Shown here in pieces: positions 1-59,935 of a stretch of 64,000 bases of DNA. The stretch's first letter is position 1, and each line of letters begins with the position of its first letter. The stretch covers positions 20,522,001 to 20,586,000 of the forward strand of contig NC_079166.1 of the NCBI RefSeq assembly GCF_947568905.1, given 5' to 3'. The notes below the pieces were generated by a model that saw only the letters and a list, made by a program, of their open reading frames with translations, ran no database searches and was not told the origin of the DNA. The position numbers and the translations under genes were made by a program. This DNA is from Ostrea edulis (taxonomy: Eukaryota).

Positions 1-1236
1 TATTGACCGGGTATAATTTATTTTTTGACGTAGGCCTGACCTTCCGATAAAAGTTTGATGTCGTCGTCGTTTTGAAATAAACGTAATAACGAATTAACGA
101 TCGATGAAAGTAATATTTTAATGCAGCGTTATTAGAATGTTCAACAGTTTACAATGAAAAGTAGAAGTGTTTGTGCATTTGGAGTTTATTTACGTAGTTT
201 CTTTGGATCTGAGGGCGAGAGGAAATCCTGAGGCACTTTTAATAGGCCTAGCCTAGTAAGTAAAGCTGTTGAGATTTGTTACATTTAATATGCTCCAGAA
301 AAAAGAGACTATGCTTATGAATACTTGGTACCGCAGCATGTCGAAGTACTTTCGATTAGGCTTGTCCAGTAGACGGTCGATTCCTTGTCGATGATAATAG
401 TGTGCACATATTTTTGTTTTCTGATGGTAATTTTTGATTAGTAACAGACCGAGTTGGCATTTTCGTGGCCGGTAACTTGCATTATATTTCAGTGGGGGCA
501 ACATCTTTTAATTTTGCTATAAAAGGAATTCTAAATAGATACAGAATAATAAGTTTTAAGCTTTATTCCATGCATGGATATGCATAAACACAAAAAATAT
601 GTCATCCAAGCGGGGACAGTGTCAAAAGTAGTTCGGACCGGAAGTGCTTTATCAAATGGGTGCTTTATCTCACTTTCAATATACACCACACGTATGAGAT
701 AGATATGTGCATCAACAAATTCCTCTTGAGGATAATTATACACATAATATATTATAACATTGAAGATAAGTGTGAACATTGTTAATTAAGTACAACTTTT
801 AAAAAACACCTTTAAAACATACATGGAGAGGGTTAACATAAAATCCTGCTGCGCTATCCCATTCAATATTGAATAAGATAATGGTTTAATAACAACAACA
901 ACCCCTTCCAGAATAAACAAGATCCTGGAATAACATCGATAACATTGTCTGAAAGTCAACTCTATAATCATCATAAACCTCATCAAGTTCAGCACAAAAC
1001 AACAAGGAACGAACCTTCCAGAAATTTATTTTTGCAAACATTTATTCAATTGTGTGATGGTACATTTACCATTGACCAATTTCAATGGCTAAGCACACTG
1101 AAAACAAATCTAATAAATATGCTATAACTTGCATTTGGCATGGGAAAACGCTAAGCCTTCTTTAACAATCCAAGTAAATTAAACATTGATCTTTTTAGCA
1201 AACTCTTTATTGATCAAAATATTACAAATGACTATA

Positions 1237-3397: not shown

Positions 3398-4290
3398 CTG
3401 CAAGAAAAAAAATATAAACATGGAACGGTGAATATAAACATTGATCAATCTCGTAACTTCCATAACGAATACAGAATTAGGGGTAGGGCTAATACAGACC
3501 CCTGGGTACCTAAGAGGAGTAAGCATCCCCTGTTCACCTGTCACATCAGCCGTGAGTCCTACATTTCGAACGGGTAAACGGAGTAATTCGTAGTCAAAAT
3601 CAGTGTGTAAAGAATGACCTCAATTGGTATGCAAAATGTCAGATAGAATTTTACACAATGACAGGTTGCATTGGTATATTAGATCGGTATAACGACTTCA
3701 AAATGTGCAACATGCCGACTTTAAACGAGATAATTGAAACTCCTGTAACATCAGTTTATTTGTCATTAGTCTGCCTTTATTTAAACATGTCAAAGAACTC
3801 ATTACACAATTTTAAAAATCAACTTCCGATATGTACTTTGTGCTTACTCACCCCTTTCCAACTTTTAAAACTTTGTATCAGTCAAGCCGAAAGCCTACTT
3901 CAAAGAGGAGGCGAATTTTATTGATATGTGGTGACTTTCACGGGGCCTAAGATACCATTTTTAATTATTATGATTAAAGATCTCGGTTATATAATCTGTT
4001 TCGTTTCGGCATGTTTTGTTTCGTTTCGGCATGTTTTGTTTCGTTTCGATAGGTTTCGTTTTGTTTCATTTCCATTTCGGTTCGCACTTTACAGGCACCC
4101 GATTTTATGTAACAATAAATGTAAAGAAATAATAATGTTCTGAAGTACTTTTATAAATATCCTAACTTAAGATGTCCCTAATATATCGATAAACTACACC
4201 CTATGACGTCCTAATGTGATCTTAGGCTATTCCAAACTTTTTTCTTTTCTTCTTCCTCTTAGAATAGAAAAGAAAAGAAGATATGACTGT

Positions 4291-6638: not shown

Positions 6639-6780
6639 NNNNNNNNNNNNNNNNNNNNNNNNNNNNNNNNNNNNNNNNNNNNNNNNNNNNNNNNNNNNNN
6701 NNNNNNNNNNNNNNNNNNNNNNNNNNNNNNNNNNNNNNNNNNNNNNNNNNNNNNNNNNNNNNNNNNNNNNNNNNNNNNNN
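6639..6780. other. Assembly gap (142 N) within GST intron 4
   Basis: Run of n characters. Confidence 1.
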
Positions 6781-15358: not shown

Positions 15359-15853
15359 TATTCTCAAACTTTCGTTACAGATCAAATATTACGTTTCGTG
15401 ATTTTCTGATTTATAATCGCACTCATAACGGAGGCGATACGCCTTTATCAGTATCATGGAAACCATGTACTACTAGTCTATTCTGTATATTCAAGACAGA
15501 CCTCGAGATTATAAAGTTAGATACCTGCAGTCTAATTTGTCTCATCCGAAAAACCGCTCTATTTATTCACCTCTTACCACAAGCAAGGGGTACTGAGGAC
15601 TTTTTTCTAACCCATATCCCTACGGAAATCCTTTGTGGTACTTCACCTATTGCTGGTGGCGTCTCCATATGAGTGAACAATTCTCGACGGGACGTAAAAC
15701 AAACAAGCAACCAACCAATCAAAATCTACACCATTTTTGTGTGTGTTTTGTTGATTTTGCGACATATAGCCAGGTCACCAATACTACATAAAGGTTTATA
15801 AGTTTTATTTCTTTTCAATGCACGTGTAGGTTAGATACATGTACACTGTGACG

Positions 15854-15979
15854 TCAGTTTATCTTCAGTACTGGTGCATGTCCGCAGAAGTGGTGCAATC
15901 CGTGACTCAGAAGGTTTAGATCTTGCGCTGTGAATGCTACAGTTGTCGCGGGGGTGTCGACAAGATCTATCATGGTTTT
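15854..15979 (-). CDS. Secreted His-rich BRICHOS-like protein, exon 4, terminal (KTMIDLVDTPATTVAFTAQDLNLLSHGLHHFCGHAPVLKIN*)
   Basis: 126-nt exon with acceptor ccttcttttcgtag, the second Cys and TGA. AATAAA (tttatt on the + strand) lies at 15804-15809, about 45 nt after the stop. Confidence 0.78.
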   Translation of the reverse strand, partial: KTMIDLVDTPATTVAFTAQDLNLLSHGLHHFCGHAPVLKIN

Positions 15980-16500
15980 CTACGAAAAGAAGGTTTAAAT
16001 ATCTTTCGTTGTTTCCAGTGTATTTAAGACGAATGCAATATCATAAATCTAATACATTTAATATGCAAAATATTTATCGCTGAAATTATGTTTGAATCTG
16101 CATTCATTTATAAAGGGATGAGGCAATGCCAATTAGATTTCTTCAAATACAAAATTATACTAAACAATGAATTCAAACTTTACACAATGTTAAAATGTTC
16201 TTAATTTCAGCAGGTTGTAGACGGCACGAGACTGTGATGAATTTATCTGTCAGTAATTTTATGCCATAAAAGTCTCAAATAATCTGGCATTACGTAATAA
16301 ACAAATGTGGTTGAAGTGTTTTCTACAATAACACGTTCTTTTTGAAGACGTATTCAACAATTGATTTTTTTTCTAATTAATTCTTCTTGTTGAAATAAAT
16401 CTACAGTGAATGCCAACTTCAGCATGTTGTTAAGAAACGAATTTTTTCATTTTTGAAAATACATGAGTGTATGAACTACAACGTAAACTCCACACGGGCG

Positions 16501-17061
16501 TACTTCATGAAACTCTAACTACACATGTAACTTCAACAAGTACTTCATGAAACTCTAACTACACATGTAACTTCAACAAGTACTTCATGAAACTCTAACT
16601 ACACATGTAACTTCAACAAGTACTTCATGAAACGCTAACTACACATGTAACTTCAACAAGTACTTCATGGAACGCTAACTACACATGTAACTTCAACAAG
16701 TACTTCATGAAACTCTAACTACACATGTAACTTCAACAAGTACTTCATAAAACTCTAACTACACATGTAACTTCAACAAGTACTTCATGAAACGCTAACT
16801 ACACATGTAACTTCAACAAGTACTTCATGAAACTCTAACTACACATGTAACTTCAACAAGTACTTCATGAAACTCTAACTACACATGTAACTTCAACAAG
16901 TACTTCATGAAACTCTAACTACACATGTAACTTCAACAAGTACTTCATGAAACTCTAACTACACATGTAACTTCAACAAGTACTTCATGAAACTCTAACT
17001 ACACATGTAACTTCAACAAGTACTTCATGAAACGCTAACTACACATGTAACTTCAACAAGT
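16501..17061. repeat. 40-bp minisatellite (tacttcatgaaactctaactacacatgtaacttcaacaag), 14 copies, in intron 3 of the BRICHOS-like gene
   Basis: Exact 40-bp period from 16501 to 17060. Confidence 0.97.
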
Positions 17062-17166
17062 AGGCCGGCGTGAAGCGTCGCAGTCCACACACGTGTATTT
17101 TAAAAAAAAAATGAAAGTTTATTTATATATATATATAATTATTTACACTTTACTTTCATCTCTGAA

Positions 17167-17505
17167 GGAATACAAGTATCAACACTTCGCGAAAGTTACG
17201 TCCCTTGTCCGCCATCTCTCGGATAAAAATCGTATATCCCTACGTTGGCCTTTGTAATTTTCCTATCTGTAGCTTTGACATCTGTTATTTTTCCATCAAT
17301 TGCAGTCAACTACAATAATGTCCCAGATTGGGGCAACCCATTAACTTGTATGAAAACTTGGTAATTGGCTAAAATTCAAAGTAATAACATCTTACATGTA
17401 CATTTGGTAAGGTAAAGATGGAAAACTTGGTTTTTCACCGATTGACCTTTGGCTGACCCCACAAAGGGACGTAACTCGCGGCGAAGTGTTGATACGTGTA
17501 TTTCC
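17167..17505. mobile_element. MITE-like element with ~40-bp TIRs in intron 3 of the BRICHOS-like gene
   Basis: ggaatacaagtatcaacacttcgcgaaagttacgtccctt pairs with aagggacgtaactcgcggcgaagtgttgatacgtgtatttcc. Confidence 0.7.
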
Positions 17506-17798
17506 ATCTATTTAAACAGGAGTACTATATTCATAATTATCAAAATTCATACGCGCATTGTTTACAACTACCTTACATTCAAGAGGAAATGGCTATCGTT
17601 ATAATTTGTAAAGAGATCAAAGGCAACAGCATTGTAAACGTGATTATCCAATAATGCAGTGTGGTCTACATTCGACGTTATGTCTTGCAAGCCAGAGGAG
17701 AAAGAACACACTCTACTCCAGCATGCTCGAGCTCTGTGAATAGATTGAAACTAGTACTGTTATTGGTACATGTAAGTAAAGTATAAAACTTAACTTGC

Positions 17799-17900
17799 CT
17801 CGATAGCATGAAGACCCGTTGACGTATGGACGCTCTGTTGTTCAGCCCCAGACAGGACGTAGAGGTAGCAGTGATGGTTGGCTTTTAACGCCACGATATG
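17799..17900 (-). CDS. Secreted His-rich BRICHOS-like protein, exon 3 (HIVALKANHHCYLYVLSGAEQQSVHTSTGLHAIE)
   Basis: 102-nt exon with acceptor aaatgtag, a CY motif and the non-canonical donor GAG|GCAAGT (GC-AG intron). Confidence 0.75.
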
Positions 17901-18214
17901 CTACATTTGTATGAAGTCATGTGTAACAGTTTTAACGTGCAGAAATATGCTAGCAATAGATATACTGATTGATTAAAATATATGAAGGTCTTCAATTGTT
18001 TTTTTTTTATTATTGCTATTGCATTGTTATCGACTTATAAAAATAATTGATATTTCGAATATACAATTGTTTACATATATATATAAAGCAGTGCGTTAAC
18101 AATTAGAATTTGTGTTCATTGAAAAACTAATATTTGACTTCTGGTGATGATGTTGGCGTGACGGCGTGTTGTTGCTACCTTGTGAGATACCCCCTCATCA
18201 GGTTAGATATTTAC

Positions 18215-18295
18215 CGTTGTGTGATCGTAATGGAACGCAAAACCTTCCTCTATGACATTATGATGAGGATGTCTCGTGGTATGTGCTGCAAAAAC
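18215..18295 (-). CDS. Secreted His-rich BRICHOS-like protein, exon 2 (VFAAHTTRHPHHNVIEEGFAFHYDHTT)
   Basis: 81-nt exon with acceptor tttcgttttaactgcag and donor ACG|GTAAAT. It is open in phase 0 and completes the signal peptide (VFA-A). Confidence 0.8.
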
Positions 18296-19818
18296 CTGCA
18301 GTTAAAACGAAAGTGAAGTGTTACGTTGTATGTGTAGTTATATGTGAAGATCCGTTCAATTCTTTATGTCTCATCACACACTGTATGACTAAATTAATTT
18401 GCTGGTGATGAGATATTTCTAAGTTTCAGACAATGTTAGCTTGCAATACCTAGTCCATTTTAGAAAGACTACTTTTCATAGAATAATAGGATCTGTATCG
18501 AAACGATCCGCATGCAAGATAACATTATTGCAAGATAAGATGTAAACAAAGATGGCTGACTAGTAATCGTCAGTCAAACTCCAGAATTTCATCTATTAAT
18601 CATCAATTTGTTTTTGTAATGTTTCTGTCTTTGATTTACAGTTAAGGACCGGTAAATATTAATATTCACAATTTGAAATATTTCGCTAGCATTGATCGAT
18701 GTAAATGGATGAACGTTGAAAACATTACACGTGTGTACCTATGACATTACAAACATTCATATCAGTGACAGCAATGCTCCAGTTTCTAACCTCACGAGTA
18801 TAATACATAAATCATCAAAATAACCAACTGAAATATAGTTTATCAACATAATAAATGTATACTATCTAGATAGTTTAATATACTGATTTAAAATATGGAT
18901 GACAAAGAAAATAGCATTTCTTCTTAGCAAAAGTAATATCACAAGGTTCGCACCTCATTAGGGTTTACGTTAATGGACATTAAAGCCGATTTGGACAAAG
19001 TATATGAAGATCAAGCACATTCATATGCATCTGCTTCGGTGCACATTTCGTTTTCTATCAGGCATAACGTCACTAGATAGGCGTTCCTTTCTCAGGTTGG
19101 TCATAATCAGCATATACATGTAGTGGAAAAGGCGTTGTTGAGAAAAATTGCCCTTGTAACACACTTTCGCGCCAACACAACTTTACACAACGTGCCGTCG
19201 TGATGTCTTAGAATATACCGTTGCTCTAAAACAATTTAGCACATCTCGCTAAACTACTTTAATCAACTCATCGTCACACTGTCATTGCATTATAATTGTG
19301 TACAGTTGTATTGGCGAGACGGACAGCGAGACTGAGATTGCGTAAAGTTATGTGTCAGCGCAACAAAGTGGTCTGTGACCACGCGTTCTGTAAAGCTGTA
19401 TTAGTGCAAAGTCGTGATCTGTTATAATACAACGGCACATTGTCAAGTTTCGATAGCGCGACAGCGTGTTGTGTGACCATTTGCACATTTTCCCACGGCT
19501 CCATCACAGTTTGTAAAATGGCTCCTTGTCGCGACCCGGTTTCGAAATCATAACATCACATAATAATGTTGATAGTGCTACCGTTTGAGCGAAAGTTGCT
19601 ACATATATGAGTAAAGTACATTGCCGAACTAGTAGTGTAAAGTACATGTGCTATACCGAAATAATAGTGTTATAAAGAACTATACCAAAACTAGTAGCGT
19701 GATAAAGTACTATACGTGGGTTTTGATACCTAGTGCACGACCCAGAGGAGTGTTAAAACCTTATCGTTTCTAGAGAGTTTACTTGCGTGTACACACTATA
19801 AACATTGTTTGAACTTAC

Positions 19819-19860
19819 CGTGGAAAAAAGACCCAAAACGAAGCACGACCAAAGCATCAT
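19819..19860 (-). CDS. Secreted His-rich BRICHOS-like protein, exon 1 (signal peptide MMLWSCFVLGLFST)
   Basis: ATG-initiated hydrophobic stretch ending at the perfect donor ACG|GTAAGT, phase 0. Confidence 0.75.
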
Positions 19861-20377
19861 AATGGAATGTCCGATAGAAGTGTCCCAGTGAAACAACCTT
19901 CTTCGTGATTTTCCTATCGATACCTGGTTCTAGGTGCTTTTACAGATAACCTTTCGTAATGTTATCAAGAGAAATGAAAAGCCAGGTTATATTTAGAACA
20001 ATCAGAAGAATTTGTCTAATTAATGGTGGAGGGACAGCAGACATAGTGGTCTCAGTTTAAAAAGGTTATTTTTCGTTTTTAGCTCACCTGAACCAAAGGC
20101 TAGTGAGATTTTGGGGTCAAAATTTGTCCGGCATCTGTTGTTGTCGTTAACTTTTTCACATTTGCATCTTCTTCTCTGGAACCACCAAGCCAGTTTCAAT
20201 TAAACGTGGCGTAAGTTATCCTTGAGTAAAGGGAATTTGCTTTTTTAAGAATAAAGGATCGTTTCCCTTTCAAAAGGGGGAAATCACGAAAGGGCAAATA
20301 TAGGGTGGTGTAATCTAAAAAAAAAGCCATTGAGCGAGAAAAATGTAAATTTTCATGAGAGCTCATTGACATAGTGC

Positions 20378-28504: not shown

Positions 28505-31500
28505 TAATGAATGTAGAATGAGACTGAATACCGTAGTTGTAATAATGAATGTAGAATGACACTGAATACCGTAGTTGTACTAATGAATGTAGAATGAGAC
28601 TGAATACCGTAGTTGTAATAATGAATGTAGAATGACACTGAATACCGTAGTGTAATAATGAATGTAGAATGACACTGAATACCGTAGTGTAATAATGAAT
28701 GTAGAATGACACTGAATACCGTAGTGTAATAATGCATGTAGAATGAGACTGAATACCGTAGTGTAATAATGAATGTAGAATGACACTGAATACCGTAGTG
28801 TAATAATGCATGTAGAATGACACTGAATACCGTAGTGTAATAATGCATGTAGAATGAGACTGAATACCGTAGTGTAATAATGAATGTAGAATGACACTGA
28901 ATACCGTAGTGTAATAATGAATGTAGAATGACACTGAATACCGTAGTGTAATAATGCATGTAGAATGAGACTGAATACCGTAGTGTAATAATGAATGTAG
29001 AATGACACTGAATACCGTAGTGTAATAATGCATGTAGAATGACACTGAATACCGTAGTGTAATAATGCATGTAGAATGAGACTGAATACCGTAGTTGTAA
29101 TAATGAATGTAGAAATAGACTGAATACCGTAGTTGTAATAATGAATGTAGAAATAGACTGAATACCGTAGTTGAAATAATGAATGTAGAATGAGACTCAA
29201 TACCGTAGTTGTAATAGTGAATGTAGAATGAGACTGAATACAGTAGTTGTAATAATGAATGTAGAATGAAACTGAATACCGTAGTTGTAATAATGAATGT
29301 AGAATGAGACTGAATACCGTAGTTGTAATAATGAATGTAGATTGAGACTGAATACCGTAGTTGTAATAATGAATGTAGAATGACACTGTATTAATGAATG
29401 TAGAATGACACTGAATACCGTAGTTGTAATAATGAATGTAGAATGACACTGAATACCATAGATGTAATAATGAATGTAGAATGACACTGAATACCGTAGT
29501 TGTAATAATGAATGTAGAATGACACTGAATACTGTAGTTGTAATAATGAATGTAGAATAGGACTGAATACCGTAGTTGTAATAATGAATGTAGAATGACA
29601 CTGAATACTGTAGTGTAATAATGAATGTAGAATGACACTGAATACCGTAGTGTTATAATGAATGTAGAATGACACTGAATACCGTAGTTGTAATAATGAA
29701 TGTAGAATGAGACTGAATACCGTAGTTGTAATAATGAATGTAGAATGACACTGAATACCGTAGTTGTAATAATGAATGTAGAATGACACTGAATACTGTA
29801 GTTGTAATAATGAATGTAGAATGACACTGAATACCATAGATGTAATAATGAATGTAGAATGACACTGAATACCGTAGTTGTAATAATGAATGTAGAATGA
29901 CACTGAATACTGTAATTGTAATAATGAATGTAGAATAGGACTGAATACCGTAGTTGTAATAATGAATGTAGAATGACACTGAAAACTGTAGTGTAATAAT
30001 GAATGTAGAATGACACTGAATACCTTAGTGTTATAATGAATGTAGAATGACACTGAATACCGTAGTTGTAATAATGAATGTAGAATGAGACTGAATACCG
30101 TAGTTGTAATAATGAATGTAGAATGAAACTGAATACCGTAGTGTAATAATGAATGTAGGATGACACTGAATACCGTAGTTGTAATAATGAATGTAGAATG
30201 AGTCTCACTACCGTAGTGTATTAATGAATGTAGAATGAGTCTGAATACCGTAGTTGTAATAATGAATGTAGAATGAGTCTGAATACCGTAGTTGTAATAA
30301 TGAATGTAGAATGACACTGAATACCGTAGTTGTAATAATGAATGTAGAATGAGACTCACTACCGTAGTGTATTAATGAATGTAGAATGACACTGAATACC
30401 GTAGTGAGTTAATGAATGTAGAATGAGACTGAATACCGTAGTGTATTAATGAATGTATAATGAGACTGAATACCGTAGTGTAATAATGAATGTAGAATAA
30501 GACTGAATACCGTAGTGTATTAATGAATGTAGAATGAGACTGAATACCGTAGTTGTAATAATGAATGTAGAATGACACTGAATACCGTAGTTGTAATAAT
30601 GAATGTAGAATGAAACTGAATACCGTAGTTGTAATAATGAATGTAGAATGAGACTGAATACCGTAATGTATTAATGAATGTAGAATGAGACTGAATACCG
30701 TAATGTAATAATGAATGTAGAATGACACTGAATACCGAAGTGTAATAATGGATGTAGAATGAGACTGAATACCGTAGTGTAATAATGGATGTAAAATGAG
30801 ACTGACTACCGTAGTTGTAATAATGAATGTAGAATAAGACTGAATACCATAGTTGTAATAATGAATGTAGAATGACACTGAATACCGTAGTTGTAATAAT
30901 GAATGTAGAATGACCCTGAATACAGTAGTTGTAATAATGAATGTAGAATGACACTGAATACCGTAGTTGTAATAATGAATGTAGAATGACACTGAATACC
31001 GTAGTGTAATACTGAATGTAGAATGAGACTGAATACCGTAGTTGTAATAATGAATGTAGAATGACAATGAATATCGTAATGTAATAATGAATGTAGAATG
31101 AGATTCAATACCGTAGTTCTGATAATGAATGTAGAATGAGACTGAATACCGTAGTTGTAATAATGAATGTAGAATGACACTGAATACCGTAGTTGTAATA
31201 ATGAATATAGAATGACACTGAATACTGTAGTTGTAATAATGAATGTAGAATGACAATGAATACCGTAGTGTAATAATGAATGTAGAATGACACTGAATAC
31301 CGTAGTTGTAATAATGAATGTAGAATGACAATGAATACCGTAGTGTAATAATGAATGTAGAATGACACTGAATACCGTAGTTGTAATAATGAATGTAGAA
31401 TGACAATGAATACCGTAGTGTAATAATGAATGTAGAATGACACTGAATACCGTAGTGTAATAATGAATGTAGAATGACACTGAATACCGTAGTTGTAATA

Positions 31501-32242
31501 ATGAATGTAGAATGACACTGAATATCGTAATGTAATAATGAATGTAGAATGACAATGAATATCGTAGTTGTAATAATGAATGTAGAATGACACTGAATAC
31601 CGTAGTTGTAATAATGAATGTAGAATGACATTGAATACCGTAGTGTAATAATGAATGTAGAATGACACTGAATACCGTAGTGTTATAATGAATGTAGAAT
31701 GACACTGAATACCGTAGTGTAATAATGAATGTAGAATAAGACTGAATACCGTAGTGTAATAATGAATGTAGAATGACACTGAATACCATAGTGTAATAAT
31801 GAATGTAGAATGACAATGAATACCGTAGTGTTATAATGAATGTAGAATGAGACTGAATACCGTAGTGTAATAATGAATGTAGAATGACACTGAATACCGT
31901 TGTGTAATAATGAATGTAGAATGACACTGAATACCGTAGTTGTAATAATGAATGTAGAATGACACTGAATACCGTAGTGTAATAATGAATGTAGAATGAC
32001 ACTGAATACCGTAGTGTAATAATGAATGTAGAATAAGACTGAATACCGTAATGTAATAATGAATGTAGACTGAGACTGAATACCGTAATGTAATAATGAA
32101 TGTAGAATGAGACTGAATAACGTAATGTAATAATGAATGTAGACTGAGACTGAATACCGTAATGTAATAATGAATGTAGAATGACACTGAATACCGTAAA
32201 GTAATAAAGAATGTAGATAGACACTGAATACCGTTGTGTAAT
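28505..32242. repeat. Satellite array 1, 37/38-bp monomer (aatgaatgtagaatgacactgaataccgtag[t]tgtaat), about 100 units
   Basis: Direct reading: period 37 (for example 28621 to 28658), with a 38-bp variant. Confidence 0.98.
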
Positions 32243-33033
32243 ACCGAGCGAAGCTCGGACGGGCCGAATGCCTGTCCGCGAAGCAAGGCTCTAAAGGTAA
32301 CACGTATGTAAAAGAAAAAAGTCAAAATCAGCAAAAGAAAAAGAGATAATCTCTATATACGTTCACTGAAATTTTCGTGATCCATATGGGCGCCGCCATT
32401 TATTTTTTCATTACCTGCTTCAACAGTTATTCGTGTTTTATTTTGAATGCCAATAATAGAAGACTCTGACGTGCAATTCGTAATTTAAACACTCAGTTTG
32501 TTCAAAGTGAATAGTATAATTATCATTGTAACAGGTTTTAGCAAATAAATACATATAAAACCGTAATACGACTAAATAGATGAACGAGTTCATGAGTTTC
32601 TTTGAATAAGAATATACGATAAAATTACGGTTACTTTTTTTTCACCACAATTTTGAATCCATTGGTTAATTTTGTTTAGTTTTAACCGCCTTTTCATTGC
32701 ATACGGAATGTATTATTGTTGTTTATGATTGTTTGCTTTGAAAACGAAAAAGTCGAGCTAAATGTGACGTCACGATGCACTGTTTACGTCGTCTTGCGTT
32801 TTATTTCCCGCGTTCAATGAATAGGCGGATCCCGTAAAACTGTTGTCCCCATATAAACCCCTTTAATACTGAGATGTTACTGCGTGTTTAGCGCAATGAA
32901 AATTTCATTCAAAATATATATTTTTAAATGAATCATAATCTATTGTACTTAACGGAATTATGATTACCACTTGGGACACTCCAATGACCAGTACATTCTT
33001 CGCTCGGTCCAACGGTCACACCGTATACATATT
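32243..33033 (+). mobile_element. Non-autonomous Helentron/HINE-like element inserted within a satellite monomer
   Basis: 5' hairpin ccgagc-gaa-gctcgg. Subterminal IR accgagcgaag (32243) pairs with cttcgctcggt (32998-33008). A 3' stem-loop acggt-cac-accgt follows. There is no TSD, and the monomer gtgtaat|aatg rejoins across the insertion. Confidence 0.65.
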
Positions 33034-36000
33034 AATGAATGTAGAATGACACTGAATACCGTAGTGTAATAATGAATGTAGAATGAGACTGAATACCGTA
33101 GTGTAATAATGAATGTAAAATGACACTGAATACCGTAGTGTAATACTGAATGTAGAATGACACTGAATACCGTAGTGTAATAATGAATGTAGAATGACAC
33201 TGAATACCGTAGTTGTAATAATGAATGTAGAATGAGACTGAATACCGTAGTTGTAATAATGAATGTAGAATGACACTGAATACAGTAGTTGTAATAATGA
33301 ATGTAGAATGACACTGAATACCGTAGTTGTAATAATGAATGTAGAATGACACTGAATACCGTAGTGTAATAATGAATGTAGATTAAGACTGAATACCGTA
33401 GTGTATTAATGAATGTAGAATGAGACTCACTACCGTAGTGTATTAATGAATGTAGAATGACACTGAATATCGTAGTTGTAATAATGAATGTGGAATGAGA
33501 CTGAATACCGTAGTTGTAATAATGAATGTAGAATGAGACTGAATACCATAGTGTAATAATGAATGTAGAATGACACTGAATACCGTAGTGTAATAATGAA
33601 TGTAGAATGACACTGAATATCGTAGTGTAATAATGAATATAGAATGAGACTGAATACCGTAGTTGTAATAATGAATGTAATATGAAACTGAATACCGTAG
33701 TGTAATAATGAATATAGAATGACACTGAATACCGTAGTTGTAATAATGAATGTAGAATGAGACTGAACACCGTAGTTGTAATAATGAATGTAGAATGACT
33801 GTAAATACCGTAGTGTAATAATAAATATAGAATGACACTGAATACCGTAGTGTAATAATGAATATAAAATGAGACTGAATACCGTAGTTATAATAATGAA
33901 TATAGAATGAGACTGAATACCGTAGTTGTAATAATGAATGTAGAATGACACTGAATACCGTAGTTGTAATACTGAATGTAGAATGACACTGAATACCGTA
34001 GTGTAATAATAAATGTAGAATGACACCGAATACCGTAGTTGTAATAATGAACGTAGAATGACACTCAATACCGTAGTTATAATAATGAATGTAGAATGAG
34101 ACTGAATACCGTAGTGTAATAATGAATGTAGAATAACACTGAATACCGTAGTTGTAATAATGAATGTAGAATGAGACTGAATACCGTAGTGTAATAATGA
34201 ATGTAGAATGAGACTGAATACCGTAGTGTAATAATGAATGTAGAATGACACTGAATATCGTAGTGTAATAATGAATATAGAATGAGACTGAATACCGTAG
34301 TTGTAATAATGAATGTAATATGAAACTGAATACCGTAGTGTAATAATGAATATATAATGACACTGAATACCGTAGTTGTAATAATGAATGTAGAATGAGA
34401 TTGAACACCGTAGTTGTAATAATGAATGTAGAATGACTGTAAATACCGTAGTGTAATAATAAATATAGAATGACACTGAATACCGTAGTGTAATAATGAA
34501 TATAAAATGAGACTGAATACCGTAGTTATAATAATGAATATAGAATGAGACTGAATACCGTAGTTGTAATAATGAATGTAGAATGACACTGAATACCATA
34601 GTTGTAATACTGAATGTAGAATGAGACTGAATACCGTAGTGTAATAATAAATGTAGAATGACACCGAATACCGTAGTTGTAATAATGAATGTAGAATGAC
34701 ACTCAATACCGTAGTTATAATAATGAATGTAGAATGAGACTGAATACCGTAGTTGTAATACTGAATGTAGAATGAGACTGAATACCATAGTGTAATAATG
34801 AATGTAGAATGACACTGAATACCGTAGTGTAATAATGAATGTAGAATGACACTGAATATCGTAGTGTAATAATGAATATAGAATGAGACTGAATACCGTA
34901 GTTGTAATAATGAATGTAATATGAAACTGAATACCGTAGTGTAATAATGAATATAGAATGACACTGAATACCGTAGTTGTAATAATGAATGTAGAATGAG
35001 ACTGAACACCGTAGTTGTAATAATGAATGTAGAATGACTGTAAATACCGTAGTGTAATAATAAATATAGAATGACACTGAATACCGTAGTGTAATAATGA
35101 ATATAAAATGAGACTGAATACCGTAGTTATAATAATGAATATAGAATGAGACTGAATACCGTAGTTGTAATAATGAATGTAGAATGACACTGAATACCAT
35201 AGTTGTAATACTGAATGTAGAATGAGACTGAATACCGTAGTGTAATAATAAATGTAGAATGACACCGAATACCGTAGTTGTAATAATGAATGTAGAATGA
35301 CACTCAATACCGTAGTTATAATAATGAATGTAGAATGAGACTGAATACCGTAGTTGTAATACTGAATGTAGAATGAGACTGAATACCATAGTGTAATAAT
35401 GAATGTAGAATGACACTGAATACCGTAGTGTAATAATGAATGTAGAATGACACTGAATATCGTAGTGTAATAATGAATATAGAATGAGACTGAATACCGT
35501 AGTTGTAATAATGAATGTAATATGAAACTGAATACCGTAGTGTAATAATGAATATAGAATGACACTGAATACCGTAGTTGTAATAATGAATGTAGAATGA
35601 GACTGAACACCGTAGTTGTAATAATGAATGTAGAATGACTGTAAATACCGTAGTGTAATAATAAATATAGAATGACACTGAATACCGTAGTGTAATAATG
35701 AATATAAAATGAGACTGAATACCGTAGTTATAATAATGAATATAGAATGAGACTGAATACCGTAGTTGTAATAATGAATGTAGAATGACACTGAATACCG
35801 TAGTTGTAATACTGAATGTAGAATGACACTGAATACCGTAGTGTAATAATAAATGTAGAATGACACCGAATACCGTAGTTGTAATAATGAACGTAGAATG
35901 ACACTCAATACCGTAGTTATAATAATGAATGTAGAATGAGACTGAATACCGTAGTGTAATAATGAATGTAGAATAACACTGAATACCGTAGTTGTAATAA

Positions 36001-38052
36001 TGAATGTAGAATGAGACTGAATACCGTAGTGTAATAATGAATGTAGAATGAGACTGAATACCGTAGTGTAATAATGAATGTAGAATGACACTGAATATCG
36101 TAGTGTAATAATGAATATAGAATGAGACTGAATACCGTAGTTGTAATAATGAATGTAATATGAAACTGAATACCGTAGTGTAATAATGAATATATAATGA
36201 CACTGAATACCGTAGTTGTAATAATGAATGTAGAATGAGACTGAACACCGTAGTTGTAATAATGAATGTAGAATGACTGTAAATACCGTAGTGTAATAAT
36301 AAATATAGAATGACACTGAATACCGTAGTGTAATAATGAATATAAAATGAGACTGAATACCGTAGTTATAATAATGAATATAGAATGAGACTGAATACCG
36401 TAGTTGTAATAATGAATGTAGAATGACACTGAATACCATAGTTGTAATACTGAATGTAGAATGAGACTGAATACCGTAGTGTAATAATAAATGTAGAATG
36501 ACACCGAATACCGTAGTTGTAATAATGAATGTAGAATGACACTCAATACCGTAGTTATAATAATGAATGTAGAATGAGACTGAATACCGTAGTTGTAATA
36601 CTGAATGTAGAATGAAACTGAATACCGTAGTGTAATAATGAATGTAGAATAACACTGAATACCGTAGTTGTAATAATGAATGTAGAATGAGACTCACTAC
36701 CGTAGTGTAATAATGAATGTAGAATGACACTGAATACCGTAGCTGTAATAATGAATGTAGAATGACACTGAATACCGTAGTGTAATAATGAATGTAGAAT
36801 GACACTGAATACCGTAGCTGTAATAATGAATGTAGAATGACACTGAATACCTTAGTGTAATAATGAATGTAGAATGACACTGAATACCGTAGTTGTAATA
36901 ATGAATGTAGAATGAGACTGAATACCGTAGTTTTAATAATGAATGTAGAATGAGACTGAATACCGTAGTGTAATAATGAATGTAGAATGAGACTGAATAC
37001 CGTAGTTTTAATAATGAATGTAGAATGAGACTGAATACCGTAGTTGTAATAATGAATGTAGAATGAGACTGAATACCGTAGTTGTAATAATGAATGTAGA
37101 ATGAGACTGAATACCGTAGTGTAATAGTGAATGTAGAATGACACTGAATACCGTAGTGTAATACTGAATGTAGAATGACACTGAATACCGTAGTGTAATA
37201 ATGAATGTAGAATGACACTGAATACTGTAGTTGTAATAATGAATGTAGAATGACACTGAATACCGTAGTGTAATAATGAATGTAGAATGACACTGAATAC
37301 CGTAGTGTAATAGTGAATGTAGAATGACACTGAATACCGTAGTGTAATAATGAATGTAGAATGAGACTGAATACCGTAGTGTAATAATGAATGTAGAATG
37401 ATACTGAATACCGTAGTGTAATAATGAATGTAGAATGAGACTGAATACCGTAGTGTAATAATGAATGTAGAATGACACTGAATACCGTAGCTGTAATAAT
37501 GAATGTAGAATGACACTGAATACCGTAGTGTAATAATGAATGTAGAATGAGACTGAATACCGTAGTTGTAATAATGAATGTAGAATGAGACTGAATACCG
37601 TAGTTTTAATAATGAATGTAGAATGAGACTGAATACCGTAGTGTAATAATGAATGTAGAATGAGACTGAATACCGTAGTTTTAATAATGAATGTAGAATG
37701 AGACTGAATACCGTAGTTGTAATAATGAATGTAGAATGAGACTGAATACCGTAGTGTAATAATGAATGTAGAATGACACTGAATACCGTAGTGTAATAAT
37801 GAATGTAGAATGACACTGAATACCGTAGTGTAATAATGAATGTAGAATGAGACTGAATACCGTAGTGTATTAATGAATGTAGAATGAGACTGAATACCGT
37901 AGTGTAATAGTGAATGTAAAATGACACTGAATACCGTAGTGTAATAATGAATGCAGAATGACATTGAATACCGTAGTTGTAATAATGAATGTAGAATGAG
38001 TCTGAATATCGTAGTGTAATAATATATGTAGAATGAGACTCAATACCGTAGC
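33034..38052. repeat. Satellite array 2, same 37/38-bp monomer, about 134 units, with higher-order repeats
   Basis: Same monomer. The diagnostic variant gactgtaaat recurs at 33797, 34435, 35036, 35637 and 36275. Confidence 0.98.
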
Positions 38053-50474: not shown

Positions 50475-52505
50475 CGTGTAATTATTTACCTGCATGTAAT
50501 ACGTATAATTATTTACCTGCATGTAATGTGTATAATTATTTACCTGCATGTAATGTGTATAATTATCTACTTATATGCCATGTGTATAATTATCTACTTA
50601 TATATAAGGTGTATAGTTATCTACCTGAATGTTAAGTGTATAATTATTTACCTGAATGTTATGTGTATAATGATCTACTTGTATGTTATGTGTATAATTA
50701 TCTAACTGAATGTTATGTGTATAATTATCTATCTGTATGTATTGTGTATAATTATCTACCTGAATGTTATGTGTATAATGACCTACCTGAATGTTATGTG
50801 TATATTTATCTACCTGAATGTTATGTGTATAATTATCTACCTGTATGTATTGTGTATAATTATCTACCTGAATGTTATGTGTATAATTATCTACCTGAAT
50901 GTTAGGTGTATAATTATCTACCTGAATGTTAGGTGTATAATTATCTACCTGAATGTTATGTGTATAATTATCTACCTGAATGTTATGTGTATAATTATCT
51001 ACCTGAATGTTATGTGTATAATTATCTACCTGTATTTTAGGTGTATAATTATCTACCTGAATGTTATGTGTATAATTATCTACCTGTATGTATTGTGTAT
51101 AATAATCTACCTGTATATTATATGTATAATTATCTACCTGAATGTTATGTGTATAATTATCTAACTGAATGTTATGTGTATAAATATCTACCTATATGTA
51201 TTGTGTATAATTATCTACCTGAATGTTATGTGTATAATTATCTACCTGAATGTTATGTGTATAATTATCTACCTGAATGTTAGGTGTATGATTATCTACC
51301 TGAATGTTAGGTGTATAATTATCTAACTGAATGCTATGTGTATAATTATCTACCTGAATGTTATGTGTATAATTATCTAACTGAATGTTAGATGTATACT
51401 TATCTACCTGAATGTTATGTGTATAATTATCTAACTGAATGTTATGTGTATAATTATCTACCTGTATGCACTGTATGTGATTATCAATGTCTATATAATA
51501 TGTAGAATTATATATATGTGAGTAATATGTTTAATTATGTACCTAAATGGGGTATATTCAATACCTGTATGCAATATTTTCTAAATATTTACCTATATGT
51601 AATATGCATTATAATCTACCTGTAATATGTATGGTTATATACCTACATGTATATGTAATATGTAATATGTATAATTATCTACCTGTATGTAATATTTATA
51701 ATTATCTACCTATATGTAAAATGCATAATTATCTACCTGTTTGTAATATGTATAATTATCTACCTATATATGATATGCATAATTATCTACCTATATGTAA
51801 TATGCATAATTATCTACCTGTATGCACTGTGTATAATCATTTACCTGTATGTACTGTGTATAATTATCTGCCTGTATGTATTATGTATAATTATCTACCT
51901 GTATGTATTATGTATAATTATCTACCTGTATGTATTATGTATAATTATCTACCTGTATGCAATGTGTATAATTATCTACCTGTATGTAATATGCATAATT
52001 ATCTACCTGTATGTAATATGTATAATTATCTACCTGTATGTATTGTGTATAATTATCTACCTGTATGTACTGTGTATAATTATCTGCCTGTATGTATTGT
52101 GTATAATTATCTACCTGTATGTATTATGTATAAATATCTACCTGTATGCAATGTGTATAATTATCTACCTGTATGTAATATGCATAATTATCTACCTGTA
52201 TGTATTATGTATAATTATCTACCTGTATGTATTGTGTATAATTATCTACCTGTATGCACTGTGTATAATTATCTACCTGTATGTAGTATGTATAATTCTC
52301 TGTCTGTATGTATTGTGTATAATTATCTACCTGTATGCACTGTGTATAATTATCTACCTGTATGTATTGTGTATAATTATCTACCTGCATGTAGTATGTA
52401 TAATTCTCTGTCTGTATGTACTGTGTATAATTATCTACCTGTATGCACTATGTATAATTATCTACCTATATGTATTTTGTATGATTATCTACCTGCATGT
52501 GTATA
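50475..52505. repeat. 27-bp satellite (gtgtataattatctacctgaatgttat and variants) with two subarrays and a degenerate middle
   Basis: The 27-bp period gives the 9-aa repeats in the spurious ORFs at 50636-52720. Confidence 0.96.
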
Positions 52506-56200: not shown

Positions 56201-57094
56201 GTAAAAGTGTAATATGGTATAATGACAATATACAAGTAGATAAAAAACCTATTTTTTTAAAATCATGGTATGAAAAAGAATTTTTTTTTGGTAAACTCAT
56301 TGATAAATGAGAATGGAACATTTTTATCATGCGATCAATTTACAAATATTTATGTTGGGGTGCATACAAACTTTTTAGAATTTTTTAGTGTATTACAAGC
56401 AGTTAAGAAACATTGTAAAAATGTTGCTCTTAATCATTTGAGCAAAGAAGATGAACCTATTATGCCATTACATATTTTACCATTTGCCTTTGCTAATGCT
56501 GGAAATAAGAAAATATATAAGATTTTCAATTATAGTGGTGAAACACCAACAGGTCAAAAGAAATGGAACAAAAAAATTTACAATTACAGACCAGGAATGG
56601 AAAACAATTAATCTAAATGTTTTTAAATTTACAAATGATAGAAAAATACAGTGGTTACAATATAGAATAAACCAAAGAATATTAAGTACAAATACTTTCT
56701 TGAAAAAAAAAATAAAATAATCAATCATGACATGTGCAGTTTTTGTGTTAGAGAAAAAGAAACACCAGAACATATTCTATATGAGTGTGAAAAAGTGCAG
56801 AATTTTTTATGTATTGTTTATAATTGGTTTTTTGAATCTTTTACATTTGATATTGTCACAGATAAGAAAGCATTTTTACTTGGCTGTTCAGAGAATGAAT
56901 TGATTAATATCATAAATTTTCATTTGAAACATTATATATATTATTCTCGATGTAAAGAAAGTCCACTGCTTTTAGTAAAACTTAAGAATATCTGGATAAA
57001 TGTATATCATATTGAAAGACACATAGCTCTTAAGAAGAGTTGTATAGAACTATTTGAGGAAAAATGGAAATTGTTTAAAAAACTGAATGAATGA
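53279..57094 (+). pseudogene. Disrupted ORF2 of an L1/Tx1-clade LINE (APE endonuclease, reverse transcriptase, C-terminal CCHC)
   Basis: Endonuclease motifs: SVNCQGL, CLQDTH, LVNLYGPN, GDFN, RLDYFLVS, SDH. Linker: KWIEEGEKPSTYF. RT motifs: PGSDG, NWRPITLLN, DFEKAFD, GCRQGDPIS, QLADDT. C-terminal CSFC..ETPEHILYEC. The frame is broken by several frameshifts and stops. Confidence 0.93.
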
Positions 57095-59280: not shown

Positions 59281-59935
59281 GTTTTTACTTTAATTCTTAC
59301 CATTTCACTGACTGTATATTATTAAACTTTTTTTAAATAATGTAAACTCTCTCTGATTATATGTATTTAGTGATTTGTTCATTTTACCAACAACAAAAAA
59401 ACAAAAACAAAAACAAAATCCCTTTTCATTTATACACGTTAAGAGGCTCCCTGTCCTATGATTGCAGTTTGAGAAATAAATTCACCAGAAGTGAATTTAC
59501 AGAAAATATTCTATCAAATGTGAGCAGACAATCTTTCTTTTGTTCTTGTAATAAAATATCGCCGACGGAGCAGAATGAATCAGATTTATCAAAGTCTGGG
59601 ATATGTAGTGTGTATACGACATTGCCGCATGCATTATTTCCATTTTTATAAGATCGGGGTCGTTATCTAAATTAGATATGACAAACAGCATGCGCATAAC
59701 GGTCACCGAGAATCGAGATATGCACAATACTGAATGCTGGGTAATGTCGTGCATTCCAAGTTGTAACGAAGACTGTGTCAATAGAAGTATTGTCGTGCAT
59801 GGTGGACATTAAGTACTAAGTGAGAAAATATTCCGATTTAGCAGTTCCGTTATTTCGTTTAAGCTTTATTATGTCGGCTTAAAGTACATTTGTGAAGTAC
59901 CAATATGTTTGAATGCAAGAGTAAGGACTTGTAGG

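What the first reader, a model, noticed from the sequence alone, without database searches (positions are those of the whole stretch)
15854..19860. Hidden four-exon gene for a small secreted, histidine-rich, stand-alone BRICHOS-like protein
Seen in sequence: four minus-strand exons, all phase 0, splice into MMLWSCFVLGLFSTVFAAHTTRHPHHNVIEEGFAFHYDHTTHIVALKANHHCYLYVLSGAEQQSVHTSTGLHAIEKTMIDLVDTPATTVAFTAQDLNLLSHGLHHFCGHAPVLKIN. This is 116 aa with 15 His and a poly(A) signal 45 nt after the stop. None of it appears in the ORF track. Established: BRICHOS domains (proSP-C, ITM2/Bri, gastrokines, annelid antimicrobial-peptide precursors) have a conserved Asp, a CY-type motif and a C-terminal Cys forming one disulfide, and they act as anti-amyloid chaperones. 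Inference: the FHYD..., CYLY... and FCGHAP spacing matches that pattern. Here the domain would stand alone behind a signal peptide with no client segment, and it is unusually His-rich. That suggests a secreted chaperone, or a metal-binding or pH-responsive mucus, shell or defence protein.
Basis: partly seen in the sequence, partly recalled or inferred. Interest (0 to 1): 0.8.

Follow-up and report, generated by a model that had tools for sequence, protein, structure and literature searches.

The report
Oyster secreted histidine-rich stand-alone BRICHOS protein
This is a real, expressed four-exon flat-oyster gene, already annotated only as "uncharacterized", that encodes a small secreted histidine-rich protein consisting almost entirely of a divergent BRICHOS (anti-amyloid chaperone) domain and belonging to an undescribed family found across molluscs.

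Summary
RNA contigs from two runs cross all three junctions at the predicted bases and end in poly(A) about 15 nt after the AATAAA. The gene is not hidden. It is NCBI's "uncharacterized protein LOC125675273 [Ostrea edulis]".

The BRICHOS reading is supported by four lines of evidence:
- **Transitive sequence link.** The oyster profile finds Solemya proteins at E 2e-12 and 1e-9 that pass Pfam's BRICHOS cut-off. hhalign gives 96% probability, with the Asp and both Cys in register.
- **Confident model.** An AlphaFold model has domain pLDDT of 94-98.
- **Unique fold match.** Among 48,161 PDB chains, the only match with Z of 5 or more is the proSP-C BRICHOS domain (Z 6.5).
- **Conserved residues.** The two Cys are the only invariant residues across 70 relatives. 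The Asp is D or E in 65 of 70.

The family is mollusc-wide (bivalves and gastropods), unnamed, and usually 110-160 aa. Its layout is signal peptide, Thr/His-rich tail, then a BRICHOS domain ending at the C-terminus, with no client segment.

Function is inferred, not shown: a secreted chaperone working on other proteins, with pH- or metal-sensitive histidines. Neither disulfide geometry nor tissue of expression could be tested here.

The parts
15790..19920 (-). Whole transcribed unit as far as the RNA contigs reach (5' end at or beyond 19920; poly(A) site about 15790)
   Evidence: RNA contigs of runs X1 and X2 span it in four pieces with no mismatches (table 8)
19861..19920 (-). 5' UTR (at least 60 nt)
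   Evidence: The X1 contig reaches 19920 and the X2 contig 19908. The ATG is at 19860
19819..19860 (-). Exon 1 coding part, residues 1-14 (most of the signal peptide)
   Evidence: Sequence. The joint to 18295 is seen in two RNA runs
18296..19818 (-). Intron 1, GT-AG, phase 0
   Evidence: Joint 18293/19817 with cut +2 and ends CT..AC on the + strand
18215..18295 (-). Exon 2, residues 15-41: end of the signal peptide, the short Thr/His tail (HTTRHPHH), BRICHOS strand beta2 and the conserved Asp38
17901..18214 (-). Intron 2, GT-AG, phase 0
   Evidence: Joint 17900/18215 in two RNA runs
17799..17900 (-). Exon 3, residues 42-75: strands beta3 and beta4 with the invariant Cys52, the VHTxxGL motif and the start of helix 1
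15980..17798 (-). Intron 3, GC-AG (donor GAG|GCAAGT), phase 0. It holds a 40-bp x 14 tandem repeat at 16500-17062 and a high-copy interspersed repeat at about 17140-17570
   Evidence: Joint 15979/17799 with ends CT..GC in two RNA runs. Tandem repeat. DNA-run depth of about 40,000 against about 35 in the flanks (table 2)
15854..15979 (-). Exon 4 coding part, residues 76-116 plus TGA: helix 1, strand beta4', helix 2 with the invariant Cys107, and strand beta5. The protein ends with the domain
15790..15853 (-). 3' UTR with AATAAA at 15804-15809 and poly(A) addition at about 15789-15791
   Evidence: Sequence. Loose ends made of T runs at 15789/15791 in X1 and X2 (table 7)
15857..18256 (-). Genomic span encoding the BRICHOS-like domain (residues 28-116), interrupted by introns 2 and 3
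   Evidence: Domain limits come from alignment A2, the AlphaFold models and the structural alignments of model 22..115 / 30..115 to proSP-C 95..197 / 97..197

Best explanation
**What it is.** This is the Ostrea edulis gene LOC125675273. It is a transcribed, correctly spliced four-exon gene for a 116-aa precursor.

**Layout of the protein.**
- A cleavable N-terminal signal peptide of about 18 residues.
- A short Thr/His-rich tail.
- One divergent BRICHOS domain (residues about 28-116) that runs to the C-terminus.

There is no transmembrane anchor, no furin site and no attached amyloid-prone or antimicrobial 'client' peptide.

**Family.** It belongs to an unnamed family found across molluscs that shares this layout.

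**Most likely mechanism (inferred, not shown).** The mature protein of about 11 kDa is secreted. It acts as an ATP-independent BRICHOS-type chaperone on other aggregation-prone secreted proteins, rather than on a segment of its own chain.
- The conserved Cys52-Cys107 pair would form the helix2-strand4 disulfide.
- Asp38 would be the pH-titrating switch, as in proSP-C and Bri2.
- The many histidines (15% of the mature chain) would add a pH or metal (Zn/Cu/Ni) dependent change of charge or assembly. The calculated net charge is +7.7 at pH 5.5 and -5 at pH 8.1.

**Odds.** Real expressed gene: about 0.99. BRICHOS homology: about 0.93. Secretion: about 0.85. Chaperone mechanism with a His switch: about 0.4.
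For: **Gene model.**
- Exon borders read directly.
- Spliced product identical to P0001.
- RNA contigs cross all three junctions and carry poly(A).
- The exact protein is annotated by NCBI.
- A paralogue on another chromosome has the same exon borders, including IE|K.

**Homology.**
- Pfam BRICHOS is the only family hit repeatedly among family members: 3 of 10 and 5 of 55, best E 2.6e-8.
- Profile A2 hits Solemya P0037 and P0045 at E 2.1e-12 and 1.4e-9 in 1.84 billion proteins.
- Both score above Pfam's BRICHOS cut-off, 27.9 and 34.4 bits against 25. In P0045 the Pfam match lies on the same residues that A2 matches.
- hhalign of A2 against the Solemya proteins gives 96.4% probability and E 1.5e-9.

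**Fold.**
- The AlphaFold model built on 70 sequences has domain pLDDT of 94-98, and all five models agree.
- The element order is b2-b3-b4-a1-b4'-a2-b5. This fits the BRICHOS topology described in PMC9714404.
- All top 7 Foldseek PDB hits are BRICHOS.
- In an exhaustive comparison with 48,161 chains, the only Z of 5 or more is 2yad_A: Z 6.5, 2.8 A over 67 of 77 residues.
- ESM Atlas gives TM 0.60 to the SP-C cluster and 0.52 to the ITM2 cluster.

**Hallmark residues.**
- C52 and C107 are the only invariant columns in 70 sequences. D38 is D in 56, E in 9 and N in 3.
- The ends of the structural alignment (30->97, 115->197) put D38 on proSP-C D105.

**Secretion.**
- Every full-length member starts with Met plus about 15-20 hydrophobic residues, followed by small residues and TT.

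**Histidines and charge.**
Against: - Pfam does not detect BRICHOS in the window protein itself, even at E of 10.
- A profile search of PDB sequences found nothing.
- Foldseek E-values are weak (0.013-0.5). Z of 6.5-6.9 is in the range the tool warns can be a common arrangement.
- The link to canonical BRICHOS therefore rests on the transitive sequence step plus the uniqueness of the structural hit.
- No signal-peptide predictor was available.
- No coordinates were given, so the Cys52-Cys107 distance was not measured.
- No functional, tissue or metal-binding data exist.
- The RNA evidence comes from one study of small libraries labelled 'mollusc metagenome'.
- In this particular protein the His tail is only about 9 residues. 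Any tail-based function would be weaker here than in paralogues with 25-35 residue tails.
Confidence: 0.75

Rival explanations
1. It is primarily an extracellular metal-binding, buffering or transport protein for Zn, Cu or Ni. The histidines are the working part, and the BRICHOS fold is only a stable scaffold with no chaperone role.
For: - 15 His in 116 aa.
- The T-T-x-H-H-x-H-H tail is conserved in about 49 of 70 relatives.
- Several His inside the domain are conserved: H66 in 56 of 70 and H42 in 49 of 70.
- Paralogues carry 25-35 residue poly-His-like tails.
- From my own knowledge, not tested here: oysters accumulate very high Zn and Cu.
Against: - No metal-binding family is matched. The only such hit is a chance-level Csp1 match at E 0.034 in one paralogue.
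- The most strongly conserved residues are the BRICHOS hallmarks C, C and D, not the histidines.
- The tail in the window protein is short.
- There are no binding data.
Confidence: 0.25
2. It is a precursor in the style of proSP-C or the annelid BRICHOS antimicrobial-peptide precursors. The N-terminal Thr/His-rich segment would be the cargo, a histatin-like antimicrobial or bioactive peptide. The BRICHOS domain would be its intramolecular chaperone and would be removed by processing.
For: - BRICHOS domains normally accompany a cargo peptide in the same chain. In proSP-C that cargo is N-terminal and the domain ends the protein, as here (PMC9714404).
- Annelid BRICHOS-AMP precursors exist in a sister phylum (PMC9756803).
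- The tail is a conserved family feature.
Against: - No dibasic or furin-type site lies between the tail and the domain in the window protein or its close homologues.
- The tail is only about 9 residues here.
- The tail is hydrophilic and not beta-prone, so it has no obvious need for an anti-amyloid chaperone.
- AlphaFold does not dock it on the sheet (pLDDT 50-58).
Confidence: 0.12
3. It is a type II membrane protein. The N-terminal hydrophobic stretch would be an uncleaved signal anchor, as in ITM2/Bri, tenomodulin and proSP-C, with the BRICHOS domain displayed on the cell surface or in the lumen.
For: Most characterised BRICHOS proteins are type II membrane proteins (PMC9714404). No signal-peptide predictor could be run.
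Against: - The hydrophobic core is only about 14-16 residues.
- It starts at residue 3 with no cytoplasmic or positively charged N-region.
- It is followed by small residues (VFA-A, AVG-M, VLS-T) typical of signal-peptidase sites across the family.
Confidence: 0.08
4. It is not a BRICHOS homologue at all. It would be a small alpha/beta protein that resembles the fold and the D/C/C pattern by convergence.
For: - Pfam gives no hit for the protein itself.
- The PDB profile search is empty.
- Structural Z of 6.5-6.9 and Foldseek E of 0.01-0.5 are modest.
Against: - The transitive sequence link has strong statistics.
- BRICHOS is the top hit in four independent structure searches. The next unrelated chain is about 2 Z units lower.
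- The hallmark residues are in register.
Confidence: 0.05

Closest known systems
proSP-C BRICHOS domain (human SFTPC, PDB 2YAD)
   Same: - It is the best structural match: Z 6.5-6.9, rmsd 2.6-2.8 A over 67-70 residues.
- The domain is the C-terminal end of the protein in both.
- A hydrophobic N-terminal segment, then a linker, then BRICHOS.
- Asp at the end of strand 2, and a Cys in strand 4 paired with a Cys in helix 2 by position.
   Different: - In proSP-C the N-terminal hydrophobic segment is the mature transmembrane surfactant peptide, which is the client. Here it looks like an ordinary cleaved signal peptide.
- Sequence identity is 17-19%.
- The oyster domain has the extra strand between b4 and b5 that proSP-C lacks. 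It has no long disordered loop.
- The His-rich composition is absent from proSP-C.
Gastrokines (GKN1/GKN2), secreted vertebrate BRICHOS proteins
   Same: Both have a signal peptide followed by a BRICHOS domain, are secreted, and have no membrane anchor. The nearest named cluster by language-model features is GKN1 (score 0.89).
   Different: - From my own knowledge: gastrokines are longer (about 180 aa) and have a C-terminal extension after the domain.
- They have no Thr/His-rich tail.
- No sequence-level match was obtained here.
Solemya velum tandem-BRICHOS hypothetical proteins (P0037, P0045, P0106, P0107)
   Same: They are the closest Pfam-validated BRICHOS relatives. hhalign gives 96.4% probability and E 1.5e-9. 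They are also secreted-looking, His-containing mollusc proteins.
   Different: - They have two BRICHOS domains in tandem (about 218 aa).
- They pass Pfam's threshold, which the oyster family does not.
- They are themselves uncharacterised.
Annelid BRICHOS antimicrobial-peptide precursors (arenicin, alvinellacin, capitellacin, nicomicin)
   Same: They are lophotrochozoan secreted precursors with a BRICHOS domain (PMC9756803).
   Different: They carry a Cys-rich beta-hairpin antimicrobial peptide C-terminal to the domain. The oyster protein ends with the domain and has no such peptide.
OAF (out at first), a BRICHOS member recognised only through structure models
   Same: It is a precedent for a BRICHOS member that sequence models missed and that was found through AlphaFold models plus profile comparison (PMC9714404). 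OAF clusters also appear among the Atlas neighbours.
   Different: OAF has a furin site and a 70-residue disulfide-rich mature polypeptide. Neither is present here.

Membership tests
BRICHOS domain (Pfam PF04089) | Significant match to the family's sequence model | tested here: inconclusive
   **Direct test fails.**
- The window protein gives 0 hits at E up to 10.
- Close homologues give at best E 0.032.

**Transitive test succeeds.**
- Family profile A2 reaches Solemya P0037 and P0045 at E 2e-12 and 1.4e-9.
- Those proteins reach PF04089 above the gathering score, 27.9 and 34.4 bits against 25.
- hhalign gives 96.4% probability.
BRICHOS domain (Pfam PF04089) | Fold: a central sheet of consecutive antiparallel strands plus a final strand, with two helices (PMC9714404; PDB 2YAD) | tested here: met
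   - Model with domain pLDDT of 94-98: E34-38, E43-48, E51-56, H59-83, E89-91, H93-107, E112-114.
- 2YAD is the unique hit with Z of 5 or more among 48,161 chains.
- The top 7 Foldseek hits are all BRICHOS.
- Strand b1 is not confidently modelled.
BRICHOS domain (Pfam PF04089) | Two conserved cysteines, one in strand 4 and one in helix 2, forming one disulfide | tested here: inconclusive
   - Conservation and placement are met. C52 lies in strand E51-56 and C107 at the end of helix H101-107.
- They are the only invariant columns in 70 sequences.
- They align with the Cys of the Pfam-positive Solemya domains.
- The bond itself, or the S-S distance, could not be checked because no coordinates are returned.
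BRICHOS domain (Pfam PF04089) | Conserved Asp at the end of strand 2 (proSP-C D105, Bri2 D148; PMC9627735) | tested here: met
   - D38 ends strand E34-38.
- It is D in 56, E in 9 and N in 3 of 70 sequences.
- FHYD aligns with FLYD of the Solemya BRICHOS proteins.
- The structural alignment offset (30->97) places D38 on D105.
BRICHOS-containing proproteins (typical architecture) | N-terminal transmembrane or signal segment directing the domain into the secretory pathway | tested here: met
   An N-terminal hydrophobic stretch is present in the window protein and in all full-length relatives. Whether it is cleaved or acts as an anchor was judged by eye only; no predictor was available.
BRICHOS-containing proproteins (typical architecture) | A proprotein-convertase site and an attached beta-prone or amyloidogenic 'client' or mature peptide | tested here: not met
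   - The protein ends 2 residues after strand b5.
- There is no RXXR or dibasic site.
- The only extra segment is a hydrophilic Thr/His tail of about 9 residues.
- This is why it is called stand-alone. proSP-C also departs from this layout.
Histidine-rich metal-binding proteins (generic class) | Demonstrated or model-supported metal site | not testable with these tools
   Only composition (15% His in the mature chain) and conservation of H42, H66 and the tail histidines are shown.

The most novel reading that the evidence does not exclude
Molluscs would possess a dedicated family of minimal BRICHOS chaperones with no client of their own, secreted into extracellular fluids such as mucus, haemolymph or gut. 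Anti-aggregation activity or oligomeric state would be switched by histidine protonation or by Zn/Cu binding. That would be a natural 'stand-alone' BRICHOS working on other proteins, with a built-in pH/metal sensor added to the conserved Asp switch.
Probability: 0.25. Interest if true: 0.65.

Novelty: new variant of a known kind. Interest (0 to 1): 0.45.

Why it matters
BRICHOS domains are studied as natural anti-amyloid chaperones. Almost all known ones sit in the same chain as their aggregation-prone client.

A mollusc-wide family that is essentially a bare, secreted BRICHOS domain with a His-rich tail would be a natural example of the domain acting on other proteins. It might also offer a compact 89-residue scaffold whose activity responds to pH or metals.

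For genome annotation, it gives a domain assignment to dozens of 'uncharacterized' mollusc genes that Pfam currently misses.

It is not a new fold or a new kind of system, and its function remains untested.

Tried and rejected
- **Pfam on the protein itself.** No hit at E up to 10.
- **NCBIfam.** Nothing meaningful.
- **Profile search of PDB sequences.** 0 hits at E up to 10.
- **Paralogues in the 64-kb window.** tblastn with ten family members found only the four exons. The next best hit (3718-3831, E 0.057) is taken as noise. So there is no local array.
- **Literature.**
  - No paper holds any of 12 LOC or UniProt identifiers of family members.
  - BRICHOS combined with oyster, mollusc or bivalve terms returned only reviews of annelid BRICHOS antimicrobial peptides. 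One Mytilus digestive-gland table listed an unspecified 'BRICHOS domain-containing protein'.
- **Earlier notes of this scan.** Nothing by place or by words.
- **Word-search hits P0019-P0025.** These are exon-plus-intron read-throughs on short unspliced contigs, so they were left out of the alignments.
- **Big-search hits P0044, P0079 and P0091.** A Cys-rich repeat protein, a 5886-aa protein and a collagen-like protein were treated as spurious and left out.
- **Cys-Cys distance and clustering of conserved His in the model.** Not possible, because model coordinates are not exposed.
- **Signal-peptide prediction.** No tool was available; it was judged by eye.
- **How the protein was entered.** The 116-aa protein was typed once each into, copied from the finding. 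A script then verified it as identical to the spliced window sequence. All later calls used P0001.


Full report
**1. The observation**

- Exon 1: 19860-19819, followed by GTAAGT.
- Exon 2: 18295-18215, preceded by CAG and followed by GTAAAT.
- Exon 3: 17900-17799, preceded by TAG.
- Exon 4: 15979-15854, preceded by TAG and ending in TGA.

The lengths are 42, 81, 102 and 126 nt, so every intron is phase 0. A script joined these coordinates. It has 15 His. AATAAA sits at 15809-15804, 45 nt after the stop.

With a 20-aa minimum the ORF list holds only fragments of exons 1, 3 and 4 (34-47 aa). Nothing would show at the default 60 aa.

One detail was missed. The donor of intron 3 is GAG|GCAAGT, which makes it a GC-AG intron.

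**2. Is it a real gene?**

Yes.
- The word search returned an exact, full-length match: 'uncharacterized protein LOC125675273 [Ostrea edulis]'. The window is therefore European flat oyster, and this exact model is already in RefSeq. The gene is hidden only from a prokaryote-style ORF track.
- Four small RNA-seq runs of one study hold about 10% of the sampled words of the 4.3-kb stretch. That is about the exonic fraction.
- Laying two of them gives single contigs of 474 and 462 nt at k-mer depths of 164 and 143.
- The contigs lie at 15791-15979, 17799-17900, 18215-18295 and 19819-19920 with no mismatches.
- All three joints are at the predicted bases. The intron-3 joint has ends CT..GC on the + strand, which is GC..AG on the gene strand.
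- T-run loose ends at 15789/15791 are poly(A) tails 13-15 nt after the hexamer.
- A DNA run (X5) covers the region continuously and shows no spliced copy, so this is not a retrogene artefact.
- A paralogue on another chromosome (P0015, LOC125680795, locus L001) has the same exon borders, including the invariant ...AIE|K... junction. It has an ordinary GT donor at that site.

**3. What the protein is**

*Sequence evidence.*
- Pfam finds nothing in the protein itself, even at E of 10.
- Close homologues exist in Crassostrea virginica, Magallana gigas, Saccostrea echinata and S. cucullata, at 47-74% identity. All are 'uncharacterized' and none has a Pfam domain.
- Scanning members one by one, BRICHOS (PF04089) is the only family hit more than once: 3 of 10 members, best E 0.032.
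- I cut the domain out of 16 oyster proteins (alignment A2) and searched 1.84 billion representative proteins. This gave 74 clusters at E of 1e-3 or better. Nearly all are 110-160 aa with the match at the C-terminus.
- Twenty of these clusters were looked up. Eighteen are named records and all of those are molluscs. The bivalves are Crassostrea, Mytilus, Pecten, Argopecten, Mizuhopecten, Pinctada, Mactra and Solemya. The gastropods are Patella, Haliotis and Gigantopelta. None has a functional name. The other two (P0029, P0092) are unnamed marine-transcriptome records whose organism was not determined.
- Two of the hits, Solemya velum P0037 (E 2.1e-12) and P0045 (E 1.4e-9), pass Pfam's BRICHOS gathering score at 27.9 and 34.4 bits against 25. 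In P0045 the Pfam match (38-106) overlaps the stretch matched by the oyster profile (29-104).
- Profile-profile comparison of A2 with four such Solemya proteins gives 96.4% probability and E 1.5e-9 over 76 columns. FHYD aligns to FLYD, HCYLY to ACYLA and HFCGH to EMCAH.

*Structure evidence.*
- With 10 sequences AlphaFold gave pLDDT 77.8.
- With 70 sequences it gave 85.7 overall and 94-98 for residues 31-116. All five models agree.
- The elements are E34-38, E43-48, E51-56, H59-64/68-83, E89-91, H93-99/101-107 and E112-114.
- This is the BRICHOS order b2-b3-b4-a1-b4'-a2-b5 as described in PMC9714404. It includes the extra strand between b4 and b5 that most BRICHOS domains have and proSP-C lacks.
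- Foldseek against the PDB ranks seven BRICHOS chains (2YAD A-F, 8OVI) first for both models. The E-values are weak, 0.013-0.5.
- VIA-align re-scoring gives 2yad_B Z 6.9, with 2.6 A over 70 residues.
- An exhaustive comparison with 48,161 representative chains finds exactly one chain with Z of 5 or more: 2yad_A, Z 6.5, 2.8 A over 67 of 77 residues. Another BRICHOS entry is second at Z 4.8.
- The ESM Atlas agrees. By structure it gives surfactant protein C TM 0.60 and ITM2 TM 0.52. By features it gives a GKN1 BRICHOS cluster at 0.89. Three unnamed mollusc clusters rank above these.

*Hallmark residues.*
- PMC9627735 states that only one Asp and two disulfide-forming Cys are strictly conserved in BRICHOS.
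- In the 70-sequence alignment the only invariant columns are C52 and C107. D38 is D in 56, E in 9 and N in 3.
- D38 ends strand 2, C52 lies in strand 4 and C107 at the end of helix 2.
- The ends of the structural alignment (30->97, 115->197) put D38 on proSP-C D105.
- I could not measure the Cys-Cys distance, because coordinates are not returned.

**4. Architecture and what is unusual**

Residues 1-18 are a short hydrophobic segment with small residues before the likely cleavage site (VFA-A). The same pattern is seen throughout the family.

Next comes a Thr/His-rich tail. It reads HTTRHPHH here, and up to about 35 residues (TTxHHGHHHSHxTHVHGHHTGPTHEP) in paralogues. T19/T20 and H23/H25/H26 are conserved in most members that have the tail.

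The BRICHOS domain fills the rest, and the protein stops two residues after the last strand. There is no furin site and no C-terminal peptide. Two of the five features usually listed for BRICHOS proproteins are therefore absent.

The layout most resembles proSP-C, where the domain also ends the protein, and the secreted gastrokines.

Within the domain the family has its own conserved motif, VHTxxGLxxxE. The counts are H66 in 56 of 70, G70 in 61 of 70 and E75 in 66 of 70.

The predicted mature chain is 98 aa, 10.9 kDa, pI 6.4 and 15% His. Its calculated net charge goes from +7.7 at pH 5.5 to -5 at pH 8.1.

**5. Mechanism**

What is shown: the gene is transcribed, spliced and polyadenylated, and it encodes a BRICHOS-fold homologue.

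What is inferred:
- It is secreted.
- It acts as an ATP-independent chaperone on other proteins, because it carries no client of its own.
- The Asp and the many histidines make it sensitive to pH or metals.

I put about 0.4 on this mechanism. The rivals are as follows.
- A metal-binding protein that only uses the fold as a scaffold: 0.25.
- A precursor whose His-rich tail is the cargo: 0.12. The lack of a processing site and the 9-residue tail here argue against it.
- A type II membrane protein: 0.08.
- Convergence rather than homology: 0.05.

**6. Genomic context**

There is a single copy in this window. C. virginica has three family genes within 21 kb. O. edulis has at least one paralogue on another chromosome.

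**7. Novelty**

No paper in the library mentions any of twelve identifiers of family members. BRICHOS in lophotrochozoans is discussed only for annelid antimicrobial-peptide precursors.

The finding is a divergent, Pfam-invisible, mollusc-wide subfamily of a known domain with a minimal architecture and a His-rich tail. That makes it a new variant of a known kind. It is of moderate interest, and its function is unknown experimentally.

Noticed in passing
window 17797-17798 (minus-strand donor of intron 3); L001:12597-12603: Intron 3 uses a GC-AG donor (GAG|GCAAGT) and is spliced accurately in RNA. The O. edulis paralogue on another chromosome has GT at the same position (GAG|GTAAGA).
   Followed up: yes
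window 17140-17570: Part of intron 3 is a very high-copy interspersed repeat. Summed contig depth in a DNA run is about 40,000, against about 35 for the flanks. Many loose ends and false joints occur at 16445-16477 and 17501-17569.
   Followed up: no
window 16500-17062: A 40-bp unit repeated 14 times at 98% identity lies inside intron 3.
   Followed up: no
window 28505-38051: A 9.5-kb satellite array of a 37-bp unit (about 255 copies, 86% matches) has strong GC and AT skew. It generates long spurious ORFs on the minus strand.
   Followed up: no
window 50479-52500: A 27-bp minisatellite of about 75 copies gives repetitive Cys/Tyr-rich pseudo-ORFs.
   Followed up: no
window 53723-57094 (+): Fragmented non-LTR retrotransposon. 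Two adjacent or overlapping ORFs match the reverse-transcriptase family RVT_1 (E 2e-14 and 2e-10), split by frame changes.
   Followed up: partly
window 59909-60910 (+): An intronless 333-aa ORF matches the rhodopsin-family 7TM receptor model over its full length (E 8e-16). It is likely an orphan GPCR gene.
   Followed up: partly
window 6639-6780: A run of 142 N (assembly gap or masked). It was left untouched.
   Followed up: no
P0033, P0036, P0038, P0043 (Mytilus and relatives): Some predicted proteins carry the same BRICHOS-like domain at the C-terminus of cadherin-repeat proteins (Cadherin E 1e-39 and 8e-15). These could be real fusions or merged gene models.
   Followed up: partly
L002 (Crassostrea virginica CM130313.1, 10.86 Mb): Three family members (141, 121 and 133 aa) lie head to tail within 21 kb, forming a tandem array that O. 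edulis lacks at the window locus.
   Followed up: partly
P0026 (257 aa): One representative holds the N-terminal half of the domain three times. It looks like a mis-assembled or mis-predicted model rather than a true repeat protein.
   Followed up: no
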